NCBI RefSeq assembly: GCF_001194135.2
Contig: NC_068984.1
Coordinates: 112,378,676-112,435,418, forward strand
Direction of reading: 5' to 3'
Length of the DNA: 56,743 nucleotides
Source: Octopus bimaculoides
Taxonomy: Eukaryota
Positions 21,030 through 21,964 of this stretch are shown piece by piece. Position 1 is the stretch's first letter. The number at the start of each line of letters is the position of its first letter. The position numbers were made by a program, and so were the translations under genes. Below the pieces are notes generated by a model, which was not told where the DNA came from, made no database searches, and saw only the letters and a program-made list of their open reading frames with translations.

Positions 21030-21063
21030 AATCAAAATAAGCAACACGGATTTTAAAGATGAT

Positions 21064-21151
21064 TGCAGTACGCACGTTTCATGCTACTCCATTTATTTAA
21101 GTAATGCGAGCATTACATTAAATGCAATATGTAGAGCAATCTTCAGCTGCA
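21064..21151 (-). ncRNA. Type I hammerhead motif, family C unit 1
   Basis: Minus strand: TGCAG-CTGAAGA-[59-nt stem II, TGCT/AGCA base, GTAATG/CATTAC tip]-GAAA-CG-TG-CGT-A-CTGCA. GUA site, predicted cut between 21069 and 21068. The first stem II position is a U.U mismatch. Confidence 0.65.
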
Positions 21152-21421
21152 CAAAAATGTAGAAAATTACAGTAGAATAGACATATTATAATTGTGGCAA
21201 CATTTAAATCCAAGTTAGAAGAAAATATATATCGAAAATATATATCGAAGTTGGAAAAAAAATATATATATATACATATATAAAAGGTTTAGATTTAGAT
21301 TCAAAATTAAATATGGTACTTATGTTTAGGCACCAGAATATAGTATGGTATTATACAAAAACCATTCCAAAAGCGAGGTGATCAAAAAATCAAAATAAGC
21401 AACACGGATTTTAAAGATGAC

Positions 21422-21509
21422 TGCAGTACGCACGTTTCATGCTATTCCATTTATTTAAGTAATGCGAGCATTACATTAAATGCAATATGTAGAGCAATCT
21501 TCAGCTGCA
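21422..21509 (-). ncRNA. Type I hammerhead motif, family C unit 2
   Basis: Same motif shifted by exactly 358 bp; one stem II substitution. Confidence 0.65.
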
Positions 21510-21964
21510 CAAAAATGTAGAATAGACATATTATAATTGTGGCAACATTTAAAATCCGAGTGGGAAGAAAATATATATCCAAAATATATATCCAAGTTGC
21601 GAAAAAAAAGATATATATATATATATATATATATATACTTTTGTCTCTAGATATTGATCTATCTAACTATGTATGTATGTATCTATTTATTTATCCCCTT
21701 TTCTTTCAACATTTCCCTTGCATCTACCTGTATCTCAACTTTTGTCTTCTCCACCCTTTCATCCTGGGAGGTCATGGCAACCAGACTAATTCACCAGACC
21801 AATCCAATAAATATATTTTTGAAGATGCTCTGTCTTAAATATCTCTTCACCTCCTGCCTCTCTTGCCTTTCCCACCCAATCCACCAAACCCACCCTATGC
21901 CTCATTCCTTCCTTCCTTCATTCATCTCAGTCTGTCTGTCTGTTTGTCTATCTCTCTCTCTCAT

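What the first reader, a model, noticed from the sequence alone, without database searches (positions are those of the whole stretch)
21031..21610. Tandem 358-nt repeat with a hammerhead ribozyme in each unit: candidate retrozyme / circRNA precursor
Seen: two direct copies 358 bp apart, bounded by (TA)n. On the minus strand each reads TGCAG-CUGAAGA-long stem II-GAAA-CG-UG-CGU-A-CUGCA, a type I hammerhead with a GUA site. The ribozyme-containing 130 bp differ at only 2 positions, while the distal 80 bp differ more. Established: metazoan non-LTR retrozymes (Schistosoma Sm-alpha, newt satellite 2) are short tandem monomers with type I HHRs that self-process multimeric transcripts into monomers, and monomer circles are reported for several animals. 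HHRs with unstable stem III, as in newt and ASBVd, can cleave as double hammerheads, and Penelope-like pLTRs carry similar minimal HHRs. Inference: a minus-strand transcript would be cut at 21427/21426 and 21069/21068, releasing a 358-nt monomer, with the two 2-nt-loop stem IIIs cross-pairing. Caveats: the first stem II pair is U.U, not the usual G-C, and the unit could be a Penelope pLTR duplication.
Basis: partly seen in the sequence, partly recalled or inferred. Interest (0 to 1): 0.85.

Follow-up and report, generated by a model that had tools for sequence, protein, structure and literature searches.

The report
Hammerhead-ribozyme repeat pair in octopus DNA
Two neighbouring copies of a ~230-base non-coding repeat in an octopus (Octopus bimaculoides) scaffold each carry a well-formed hammerhead self-cleaving-RNA motif, most likely a small Penelope-related "retrozyme"-type mobile element: a new example of a class already known in many animals, with its activity still untested.

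Summary
There are two direct copies, 21030-21262 and 21388-21610, 358 nt apart, bounded by (TA)n. Each reads on the minus strand as a type I hammerhead, with every invariant core base, three helices and a GUA site, cutting at 21069|21068 and 21427|21426. A descriptor loose enough to accept it is expected 0.0025-0.003 times per window by chance.

"Tandem repeat" is overstated. There are only 1.62 units (repeat, 105-nt unique spacer, repeat), and Tandem Repeats Finder (TRF) does not report it.

Each sequence deviation has a validated precedent:
- The U.U first pair of helix II and the GUA site both occur in the axolotl retrozyme Ax353.
- Helix III (ACGUGCGU) differs by one base from that of the mussel retrozyme.
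- The 59-nt helix II has no precedent among those four ribozymes.

The window, from Octopus bimaculoides downstream of a MEF2 exon, holds two further hammerhead families of the Penelope type, at 20.3 kb and at 32.0/50.4 kb. That makes descent from a hammerhead-bearing retroelement far more likely than coincidence.

Evidence against:
- Rfam and a covariance model built from four validated ribozymes both miss it.
- No other copy, reverse transcriptase (RT) or endonuclease was found.
- Cleavage and circle formation are untested.

Verdict: a new member of a known kind, of modest interest.

The parts
21388..21610 (-). Repeat copy 2, the upstream copy in the ribozyme-sense orientation. It begins with U8 next to (AT)13 and contains hammerhead 2.
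   Evidence: the repeat finder families D3, D6 and D7; pairwise alignment; blastn and nhmmer.
21283..21387 (-). Single-copy 105-nt spacer between the copies. It is the part of the 358-nt unit that is missing after copy 1.
   Evidence: Alignment. nhmmer finds it only once in the window plus 100 kb of other cephalopod DNA.
21263..21282 (.). Internal (TA)n-like tract between the spacer and copy 1, with an A8/U8 run beside it.
   Evidence: Sequence; repeat family D4.
21030..21262 (-). Repeat copy 1, the downstream copy in the ribozyme-sense orientation. It has a 13-nt insertion relative to copy 2 and contains hammerhead 1.
21422..21509 (-). Hammerhead motif 2. Helix I is 21509-21505 paired with 21426-21422. 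The CUGAAGA core is 21504-21498. Helix II is 21497-21439 (U.U, then UGCU/AGCA, then a long imperfect hairpin). GAAA is 21438-21435. Helix III is CGUGCG at 21434-21429. U16.1 is 21428 and A17 is 21427. The predicted cut is between 21427 and 21426.
   Evidence: Direct reading; descriptor scans; constrained folds.
21064..21151 (-). Hammerhead motif 1, with the same architecture. The predicted cut is between 21069 and 21068. It differs from motif 2 at 21088 (G for A, in the distal part of helix II).
21069..21426 (-). Predicted 358-nt monomer released if both sites are cut. GC is 27.7%. As a circle the MFE is -59.2 kcal/mol, z = -2.0, 55% paired.
   Evidence: Inference from the two cut sites; fold statistics.
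20925..21029 (.). Flanking compound microsatellite (TATG/TATC/TA)n, directly abutting copy 1.
   Evidence: TRF; sequence.
21611..21637 (.). Flanking (AT)13 microsatellite, directly abutting copy 2.
   Evidence: TRF.

Best explanation
The locus is a more-than-unit-length (1.62 unit) head-to-tail insertion of a small, AT-rich, non-coding retroelement. The element carries a type I hammerhead ribozyme: it is a non-LTR 'retrozyme' or, equivalently, a non-autonomous derivative of a Penelope-like element with pLTR-like direct repeats. It sits in a (TA)n microsatellite of Octopus bimaculoides, about 14 kb downstream of the MADS/MEF2-domain exon of a MEF2 gene, and the ribozyme is antisense to that gene.

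Proposed mechanism:
1. A minus-strand transcript spanning both copies folds so that the two near-palindromic helix III segments (ACGUGCGU) pair with each other into an 8-bp helix, giving a double hammerhead.
2. Each active site cuts after GUA, at 21427|21426 and 21069|21068, releasing a 358-nt RNA with 5'-OH and 2',3'-cyclic phosphate ends.
3. By analogy with coral, mussel and axolotl retrozymes, a host tRNA ligase could circularise this RNA.
4. A Penelope-type reverse transcriptase/endonuclease could copy it back into (TA)n sites as more-than-unit copies.

What is shown here: the repeat geometry, the complete hammerhead consensus in both copies, its improbability by chance, the energetic preference for the dimeric over the monomeric ribozyme fold, and the presence of other Penelope-type hammerheads nearby.

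What is inferred: transcription, cleavage, circularisation, mobilisation, and the identity of the autonomous partner. The copy here may well be an inactive relic of such an element.
For: Motif:
- All invariant core positions are present in both copies: C3 U4 G5 A6 N7 G8 A9, G12 A13 A14, A15.1-U16.1 and H17. Helix I is 5 bp, helix II is 4 bp plus an extension, and helix III is near-palindromic.

Chance:
- The expectation is 0.0025 per window for the tailored descriptor and 0.0033 for a more general one.
- There are no hits in 100 kb of other cephalopod DNA.

Precedents in active ribozymes:
- The axolotl HHR_Amex2/Ax353 ribozyme has a U.U mismatch at the base of helix II and a GUA site, and cleaves best as a dimer.
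- The mussel retrozyme has units of about 350-390 nt, is AT-rich, and has helix III ACGCGCGU, against ACGUGCGU here.

Energetics:
- In the 453-nt dimer the double-hammerhead fold is -76.8 kcal/mol, against -65.7 for two single hammerheads.
- The 7.7 kcal/mol gap between the ribozyme fold and the MFE is similar to that of the active mussel ribozyme, 7.4. The four validated controls range from 2.3 to 7.4.

Context:
- The window holds a textbook Penelope-type minimal hammerhead at 20310-20355 (+), inside a 119-nt inverted pair.
- A third family lies at 32037-32076 (-), with an inverted pair at 50.34-50.48 kb.
- That is three independent families against 0.0033 expected (Poisson P about 6e-9).
- Family C ends at (TA)n in two independent copies.

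Literature:
- Some Penelope-like elements prefer (TA)n targets and insert as partial tandems that form pLTRs.
- Octopus genomes carry Penelope-like elements.
- Non-LTR retrozymes are considered derivatives of Penelope-like elements.
Against: - Rfam finds no hammerhead, either at gathering thresholds or at E <= 10 on 801 nt.
- A covariance model built from four validated retrozyme hammerheads does not find it at E <= 10 with filters off, although that model does pick up family C.
- Position 10.1-11.1 is U.U instead of the highly conserved G-C, which forms part of a metal-binding site (established knowledge). Cervera & de la Pena list G10.1-C11.1 as a hallmark.
- Helix II is 59 nt. None of the four validated ribozymes has anything like it.
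- The ribozyme fold is not the MFE. It is 7.7-9 kcal/mol worse for one motif and 20 kcal/mol worse for the dimer.
- There are only 1.62 units. TRF and a published retrozyme pipeline's settings would not call it.
- No second copy of the family was found in the window or in 100 kb of other cephalopod DNA, so there is no covariation evidence.
- No RT or GIY-YIG domain was found in any window ORF of at least 60-65 aa that passed a complexity filter.
- Divergence between the copies is patchy (p = 4e-4). A single rolling-circle insertion followed by uniform decay does not predict this.
- On the plus strand each copy ends in A8(TA)n, which could be read as a retroposon tail on the strand opposite the ribozyme.
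Confidence: 0.68

Rival explanations
1. It is a dead relic. The repeats do descend from a hammerhead-bearing Penelope-related element, but this copy, or the whole family, no longer self-cleaves. The U.U pair at 10.1/11.1 and the 51-nt expansion of helix II would be decay, and the locus is inert intronic DNA.
For: - U.U replaces the conserved G10.1-C11.1 pair.
- The ribozyme fold is 8-20 kcal/mol above the MFE.
- Neither Rfam nor the custom model recognises it.
- Neighbouring hammerhead copies are visibly decayed: core U4->C in both arms at 50.4 kb, and a broken helix II pair in the left arm at 20.2 kb.
- Penelope-type minimal hammerheads have low activity in vitro even when intact.
Against: - All 11 invariant core bases are intact in both copies.
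- The ribozyme-proximal 172 nt differ at only 2 positions, while the distal 60 nt differ at 8.
- U.U plus GUA is exactly the combination in the axolotl Ax353 ribozyme, which is active as a dimer.
- A similar fold-energy gap is seen in the active mussel ribozyme.
Confidence: 0.2
2. It is a coincidental motif in a local duplication. A ~230-bp AT-rich segment was duplicated by unequal exchange or replication slippage between flanking (TA)n tracts, or was doubled by mis-assembly of a gap-rich draft scaffold. The hammerhead consensus on the minus strand would then be a chance match, copied along with the segment.
For: - (TA)n tracts sit at both ends and between the copies, and are very common here: 54 tracts of at least 12 nt in 52 kb.
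- The two motifs are one event, not two independent observations.
- The window is a draft with 15 N-gaps, mostly beside microsatellites.
- There are no other family copies and no covariation.
- Curated and custom covariance models give no hit.
Against: - The chance rate of the motif is about 0.003 per 52 kb, so about 1e-5 for a given 230-nt segment.
- Two other, unrelated hammerhead families occur in the same window. This shows that such elements really populate this region.
- The motif also has features that were not required by the descriptor: a near-palindromic helix III that gives an 8-bp dimer helix, and the same U.U/GUA combination as an active ribozyme.
- The copies differ by 4% overall and 13% distally. 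That is too much for allelic mis-assembly.
Confidence: 0.07
3. It is a plus-strand retroposon. The element would be a SINE-like or LINE-dependent retroposon whose sense strand is the plus strand. A full-length copy (spacer plus repeat plus A8(TA)n tail, 21283-21637) would have inserted into the tail of a 5'-truncated copy (21030-21282). The hammerhead-like motif would then be antisense and irrelevant to its life cycle.
For: - Both copies end on the plus strand in GAAAAAAAA followed by (TA)n.
- The upstream copy lacks the 105 nt that precede the downstream copy, as expected for 5' truncation.
- The uneven divergence fits two insertions from different source copies.
Against: - No tRNA-like head was found.
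- The antisense hammerhead match would still be a roughly 1e-5 coincidence.
- Family C, whose sense strand is set by its hammerhead, also ends in (TA)n, so a (TA)n end fits hammerhead-sense elements equally well.
- The U8/(UA)n tract can simply be internal low-complexity sequence of the unit.
Confidence: 0.05

Closest known systems
Non-LTR retrozymes of invertebrates, especially the Mytilus galloprovincialis retrozyme (Cervera & de la Pena 2020, PMC7229834)
   Same: - The host is a mollusc.
- The unit length is similar: 358 nt here, about 350-390 nt in mussel.
- Both are AT-rich and non-coding.
- There is one type I hammerhead per unit, in head-to-tail copies.
- Helix III is almost identical: GAAACGCGCGUC in mussel, GAAACGUGCGUA here.
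   Different: - The mussel family has about 5000 copies in arrays. Here only 1.62 units are seen and no other copy could be found.
- The mussel ribozyme has G10.1-C11.1, a 4-bp helix II with a 5-nt loop and a 6-bp helix I. Here there is U.U, a 59-nt helix II and a 5-bp helix I.
- Mussel circles are demonstrated. Here nothing is tested.
- There is no sequence similarity outside the ribozyme core.
Axolotl retrozyme family HHR_Amex2 / construct Ax353 (PMC7229834)
   Same: - It has a U.U mismatch at the base of helix II, a GUA cleavage site and a short palindromic helix III.
- It is weak as a monomer and much better as a dimer.
- Its unit length is about 350 nt.
   Different: - The host is a vertebrate, the sequence is GC-rich (51% against 28%), and there are about 60,000 copies.
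- Helix II is short (3 bp plus a 5-nt loop).
- Conserved loop 1 / loop 2 contacts are proposed for it. None can be recognised here.
Minimal hammerheads in the pLTRs of Penelope-like elements (Cervera & de la Pena 2014, PMC4209133; Craig et al. 2021)
   Same: - Helix I is short (4-5 bp), helix II is larger than usual, and helix III is palindromic or absent, implying dimeric action.
- The motif lies in direct repeats produced by more-than-unit insertion.
- It is associated with (TA)n targets.
- Two bona fide-looking examples lie in the same window.
   Different: - There is no RT/GIY-YIG ORF between or near the repeats.
- It lacks both the extra nucleotide between A9 and 10.1 and the G10.1-C11.1 pair, which those authors list as hallmarks.
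- Helix II here is far longer than the 6-8 bp they describe.
Newt satellite 2 and Schistosoma Sm-alpha hammerheads; double hammerheads of ASBVd (established knowledge, cited)
   Same: Type I topology, an unstable helix III, cleavage as a double hammerhead in multimeric transcripts, and short repeated units.
   Different: - Those are abundant satellite or SINE-like families with canonical G10.1-C11.1 and short helix II.
- Their processing is experimentally shown.

Membership tests
Hammerhead ribozyme (type I) | Invariant catalytic core: C3 U4 G5 A6 N7 G8 A9, G12 A13 A14, the A15.1-U16.1 pair, and H17 not G. | tested here: met
   CUGAAGA, GAAA and GUA|C are present in both copies at the stated coordinates.
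Hammerhead ribozyme (type I) | Three helices around the core, with helix I open (type I topology). | tested here: met
   Helix I is UGCAG/CUGCA, 5 bp. Helix II is UGCU/AGCA plus a further 16 bp of imperfect hairpin. Helix III is A-U plus C-G as a monomer, or an 8-bp intermolecular helix as a dimer.
Hammerhead ribozyme (type I) | A G10.1-C11.1 pair closing helix II. | tested here: not met
   It is U21497.U21439 in copy 2, and likewise in copy 1. A natural precedent with activity exists in axolotl HHR_Amex2.
Hammerhead ribozyme (type I) | Recognition by curated covariance models (Rfam Hammerhead_1, Hammerhead_3, Hammerhead_II, HH9, HH10). | tested here: not met
   No hammerhead hit at gathering score on the whole window or at E <= 10 on 20900-21700. 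A model built from four validated retrozyme hammerheads also misses it. Rfam also gives no hammerhead hit at E <= 10 for the textbook-looking minimal hammerhead at 20.3 kb.
Hammerhead ribozyme (type I) | Site-specific Mg2+-dependent self-cleavage. | not testable with these tools
   This needs in vitro transcription of monomer and dimer constructs.
Hammerhead ribozyme (type I) | Covariation that supports the helices across family members. | tested here: inconclusive
   Only two near-identical copies are available. Their two differences fall in the distal part of helix II and at position 1.6, and say nothing about pairing. No further copies could be retrieved.
Non-LTR retrozyme (metazoan) | A tandem repeat of 150-450 bp (up to about 1 kb) detectable as an array. 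| tested here: not met
   There are 1.62 units only. TRF with the settings of Li et al. 2026 (2 7 7 80 10 50 1000) reports no 358-nt period.
Non-LTR retrozyme (metazoan) | At least two consecutive units, each with a complete type I hammerhead in the same orientation. | tested here: met
   Two complete motifs lie 358 nt apart on the minus strand.
Non-LTR retrozyme (metazoan) | Non-coding and of low GC, with no LTR/PBS/PPT. | tested here: met
   GC is 27.7%. The only ORFs are short and low-complexity. No Pfam domain was found. PBS and PPT were not specifically searched.
Non-LTR retrozyme (metazoan) | Expression as linear and circular monomer RNAs. | not testable with these tools
   No transcriptome data are reachable. 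Look-ups of ORFs from the unit in assemblies of public runs found nothing.
Non-LTR retrozyme (metazoan) | A multi-copy family in the genome. | tested here: inconclusive
   No other copy in the 56.7-kb window or in 100 kb of other cephalopod DNA. The genome itself could not be searched.
Penelope-like element (autonomous) with pLTRs | An RT plus GIY-YIG endonuclease ORF between the direct repeats. | tested here: not met
   Only 105 nt plus (TA)n lie between the repeats. No RT or GIY-YIG hit was found in any complexity-filtered ORF of at least 60-65 aa in the window.
Penelope-like element, non-autonomous derivative | A more-than-unit head-to-tail insertion forming pLTR-like repeats, with a hammerhead in the repeat and a microsatellite target. 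| tested here: met
   The geometry is repeat, spacer, repeat, with (TA)n on both sides. These features are described for Penelope-like elements. Sequence homology to a known pLTR could not be tested.

The most novel reading that the evidence does not exclude
This would be an active cephalopod retrozyme family with an unusual hammerhead: obligately dimeric, U.U at 10.1/11.1, and a 59-nt helix II whose internal loop stands in for loop 2. It would produce 358-nt circular RNAs from the antisense strand of a MEF2 intron. It would be mobilised into (TA)n microsatellites by a (TA)n-targeting Penelope-like element, for example a Naiad or Neptune type. That would tie a ribozyme-bearing passenger to a clade whose own copies lack hammerheads.
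Probability: 0.15. Interest if true: 0.5.

Novelty: new member of a known kind. Interest (0 to 1): 0.3.

Why it matters
If real and active, this would extend ribozyme-processed small circular RNAs (retrozymes) to cephalopods. I found no report of them there in the papers searched.

It would also add a natural hammerhead that tolerates both a U.U closing pair and a very long helix II. That is useful for defining what the motif really requires, and for improving search models that currently miss such variants.

The clustering of three hammerhead families next to (TA)n tracts in one intron gives a concrete locus for studying how Penelope-type elements and their passengers choose targets.

It does not open a new kind of biology. 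Hammerheads in short repeats and in Penelope pLTRs are already known by the thousands in animal genomes.

Tried and rejected
- Rfam at gathering thresholds on the whole window, and at E <= 10 on the locus. Only (TA)n-driven microRNA-like noise came back, with no hammerhead.
- Unconstrained folding. The MFE is not the ribozyme fold. I first read this as evidence against the ribozyme. I dropped that reading after four experimentally active retrozyme ribozymes showed gaps of 2.3-7.4 kcal/mol by the same measure.
- Two-strand cofolding in the script sandbox crashed twice. I replaced it by folding the real 453-nt dimer with constraints.
- Searching for more copies:
  - blastn and nhmmer in the window and in five fetched cephalopod loci found nothing.
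  - An exact 21-mer scan of the metagenome, prokaryote-genome and viral collections found nothing, as expected for an animal sequence.
  - Looking for spurious ORFs translated from the unit in the large protein collections also found nothing.
- Reaching the orthologous or re-assembled locus through the MEF2 exon. The octopus gene model is not on record. The other hits lie on short contigs, and the 10-kb flank limit cannot reach 14 kb downstream.
- Looking for a Penelope RT or GIY-YIG endonuclease. Pfam scans of concatenated ORFs across the window found nothing.
- tRNA-like SINE head: none.
- A covariance model built from coral, mussel and axolotl ribozymes did not recover the candidate, but it uncovered family C.
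Full report
**1. What is there**

The plus strand between 20925 and 21637 reads as follows:
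- a compound (TATG/TATC/TA)n microsatellite at 20925-21029;
- repeat copy 1 at 21030-21262;
- a short (TA)n-like tract at 21263-21282;
- a 105-nt single-copy spacer at 21283-21387;
- repeat copy 2 at 21388-21610;
- (AT)13 at 21611-21637.

The copies start 358 nt apart. Of their first 135 nt, 133 are identical. Copy 1 then has 13 extra bases, the next 37 nt are identical, and the last 60 nt are only 87% identical. This unevenness is significant: 2 differences in 172 nt against 8 in 60 nt, Fisher p = 4e-4.

It is 1.62 units. Tandem Repeats Finder does not report a 358-nt period with the tool's default settings, with the settings used by a recent retrozyme-finding pipeline, or with a lowered score threshold.

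**2. The hammerhead motif**

The minus strand of each copy reads UGCAG / CUGAAGA / U-UGCU...AGCA-U / GAAA / CGUGCG / U-A | CUGCA.

In copy 2 the parts map as follows:
- helix I is 21509-21505 paired with 21426-21422;
- the core box is 21504-21498;
- helix II is 21497-21439;
- GAAA is 21438-21435;
- the helix III segment is 21434-21429;
- U16.1 is 21428 and A17 is 21427.

Copy 1 is the same, shifted by 358 nt. All invariant core positions are present.

I wrote a descriptor that allows a mismatched first pair in helix II, helix II up to 80 nt, and short helix III loops. It finds only these two sites on either strand of the window. It gives 0.0025 hits per window in 400 locally composition-matched random windows, and none with helix I of at least 5 bp. 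A more general descriptor gives 0.0033 per window. For one particular 230-nt segment, the chance expectation is about 1e-5.

**3. Tests the motif fails**

- Rfam finds no hammerhead, either at gathering thresholds on the whole window or at E <= 10 on 801 nt around the locus.
- The first helix II pair is U.U rather than G10.1-C11.1. Cervera & de la Pena (PMC4209133) list that pair among the hallmarks of genuine Penelope-type hammerheads.
- Helix II is 59 nt long.
- The unconstrained fold is not the ribozyme fold. With the hammerhead pairs enforced, the 95-nt segment is 8-9 kcal/mol less stable than its MFE.

**4. Comparison with experimentally active ribozymes**

The supplement of Cervera & de la Pena 2020 (PMC7229834) gives the sequences of four retrozyme constructs that cleave in vitro: coral, mussel and two from axolotl.

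- The axolotl Ax353 ribozyme reads CUGAUGA-U-GCC-CACUA-GGC-U-GAAA-CACGUG-UA|U. It has the same U.U closing mismatch and the same GUA site as the candidate. [quoted passage not shown]
- The mussel ribozyme has helix III GAAACGCGCGUC. The candidate has GAAACGUGCGUA, and the mussel unit is about 350-390 nt and AT-rich.
- Applying the same constrained-fold measure to these four controls gives gaps to the MFE of 2.3-7.4 kcal/mol. The mussel gap is 7.4 and the candidate's is 7.7. 'Not the MFE' is therefore not evidence against activity.
- I built a covariance model from the four controls. With filters off, it still does not report the candidate at E <= 10. The likely causes are the 51-nt expansion of helix II and the small, specific training set, but it remains a negative result.

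**5. Dimeric mode**

A 2-nt hairpin loop cannot close, so a monomer has only A15.1-U16.1 plus one C-G pair over a GUGC loop. The segment ACGUGCGU is a near-palindrome. Two copies can pair into an 8-bp helix with two central G.U pairs.

I folded the real 453-nt transcript that spans both motifs:
- enforcing the double hammerhead gives -76.8 kcal/mol;
- enforcing two single hammerheads gives -65.7 kcal/mol;
- the unconstrained MFE is -97.1 kcal/mol.

Thermodynamics alone does not predict that either fold dominates.

The predicted 358-nt monomer, folded as a circle, has an MFE of -59.2 kcal/mol, z = -2.0 and 55% paired bases. The complementary strand scores about the same, z = -1.9. There is no sign of the compact rod-like fold seen in some retrozymes.

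**6. Context**

The window is Octopus bimaculoides.
- It contains the MADS/MEF2-domain exon of a MEF2 gene at about 6851-7058 (+). Pfam SRF-TF scores 6e-21. The exon is 100% identical to the O. bimaculoides protein A0A0L8GCM9.
- The terminal exon of that gene model is found verbatim at about 11662-11760.
- The repeat lies about 14 kb downstream of the MADS exon, with the ribozyme antisense to the gene. It is probably in an intron of the full-length gene, but that is an inference.

No RT or GIY-YIG domain occurs in any reasonably complex ORF of at least 60-65 aa anywhere in the window. This is not a full Penelope-like element.

The window does contain two more hammerhead families.

Family B:
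- At 20310-20355 (+) it reads GACAC-CUGACGA-A-GGCUGG...UCAGCC-GAAA-CG-UU|GUGUU.
- It has the extra nucleotide after A9, the G10.1-C11.1 pair and the palindromic 15.2/16.2 pair that define Penelope-type minimal hammerheads.
- It sits in the right arm of a 119-nt, 96.6% identical inverted pair around a (TAA)n tract. The left-arm copy has one broken helix II pair.

Family C:
- At 32037-32076 (-) it reads ACUGU-CUGAUGA-ACG-GGAA-CGU-GAAA-CUCCGAG-UA|ACAGU.
- It was the top hit of the control-derived model.
- It recurs as an inverted pair at 50343-50384 and 50442-50483 with a U4-to-C core mutation.

Three independent families against 0.0033 expected gives a Poisson probability of about 6e-9. Inverted pairs of minimal hammerheads on opposite strands, and inverted truncated copies, are described for Penelope-like elements. 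Family C ends at ...CUCCGG followed by (TA)n in two independent copies.

From the literature:
- Some Penelope clades preferentially insert into (TA)n, and their non-autonomous relatives form pLTRs and head-to-tail multi-copy insertions.
- Octopus genomes carry Penelope-like elements.
- Animal retrozymes are argued to be non-autonomous Penelope derivatives.

**7. Interpretation**

The most likely reading (about 0.68) is that the locus is a more-than-unit insertion of a small hammerhead-bearing, Penelope-related non-autonomous element, that is, a retrozyme-like element, in a (TA)n microsatellite.

Whether this copy still cleaves is open. I put the chance of detectable dimer-dependent cleavage near 0.4.

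The main rival (about 0.2) shares the same origin but regards the ribozyme as decayed. A pure coincidence in a microsatellite-mediated duplication or mis-assembly (about 0.07) and a plus-strand retroposon with an A8(TA)n tail (about 0.05) are not excluded. Both require a roughly 1e-5 coincidence in a window that demonstrably hosts other hammerhead elements.

The patchy divergence between the copies is not explained by any simple version of these models. Possible causes are gene conversion, faster mutation in the low-complexity distal part, or two insertions from different source copies.

**8. What could not be done**

No other copy of the family could be obtained, so there is no covariation or copy-number evidence.
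- DNA scans of the available public collections returned nothing; they hold prokaryotic, viral and metagenomic sequence.
- Searches for spurious ORFs translated from the unit returned nothing.
- About 100 kb of other cephalopod DNA, fetched through transposase relatives, holds no copy.
- The same locus in the newer chromosome-level assembly, and the orthologous locus in other octopuses, could not be reached.

**9. Novelty**

Hammerheads in short head-to-tail repeats and in Penelope pLTRs are known by the thousands across animals, including molluscs. This is a new member of a known kind.

Its particular features are a U.U closing pair combined with a 59-nt helix II, and a cephalopod host. They give it modest specialist interest, and it is directly testable.

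Noticed in passing
window 20108-20408 (arms 20108-20226 and 20290-20408; motif 20310-20355, + strand): A 119-nt inverted pair, 96.6% identical, lies around a (TAA)n tract. Its right arm carries a textbook Penelope-type minimal hammerhead: GACAC-CUGACGA-A-GGCUGG..UCAGCC-GAAA-CG-UU|GUGUU. It has the extra nucleotide after A9, the G10.1-C11.1 pair and no loop 3. The left-arm copy has a G-to-A change that breaks one helix II pair. The descriptor gives 0 hits in 400 random windows. Rfam does not detect it.
   Followed up: partly
window 31933-32084 (-), motif 32037-32076; inverted pair around 50413 (motifs 50343-50384 - and 50442-50483 +): A third hammerhead-bearing repeat family: ACUGU-CUGAUGA-ACG-GGAA-CGU-GAAA-CUCCGAG-UA|ACAGU. 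The 32-kb copy runs into an assembly gap on its 5' side. Both arms of the 50-kb head-to-head pair carry a U4-to-C core mutation. Two independent copies end at ...CTTACTCCGG followed by (TA)n, which suggests either a (TA)n target preference or a (TA)n tail.
   Followed up: partly
window about 6851-7058 (+) and about 11662-11760 (+): These are the MADS/MEF2-domain exon of a MEF2 gene, with splice acceptor ...ttacag|GT and donor GAG|gtaaat, and the terminal exon of the short O. bimaculoides gene model A0A0L8GCM9. They identify the window as Octopus bimaculoides. They also place the finding downstream of the exon, probably in a MEF2 intron, with the ribozyme antisense to the gene.
   Followed up: partly
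window about 26009-26700: A degraded mariner/Tc1-like transposase remnant. Its translation is 69% identical to an O. bimaculoides 'uncharacterized protein' and about 76% identical at the DNA level to contigs of ENA assembly ERZ21867824. No Pfam hit reached E <= 0.01.
   Followed up: partly
window 21221-21249 and 21568-21595: Each repeat copy contains its own 2.2-copy 13-nt mini-repeat. Both sub-repeats carry the same copy-specific base: ATATATCG in copy 1 and ATATATCC in copy 2. This looks like concerted change by slippage or conversion within each copy, or independent duplication of the 13-mer.
   Followed up: no
whole window: This is a draft-quality scaffold with 15 N-gaps totalling 4806 nt, nearly all flanked by (TA)n or similar microsatellites. 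There are 54 (TA)n tracts of at least 12 nt in 52 kb. Repeat structures next to such tracts, including the finding, should be re-checked in the chromosome-level assembly.
   Followed up: no
window 19113-19264, 19440-19610, 20570-20700 and elsewhere: There are several copies of octopus SINE-like repeats. One is 88.8% identical to a locus on O. bimaculoides chromosome record CM046625.1. One lies between hammerhead family B and the finding.
   Followed up: no
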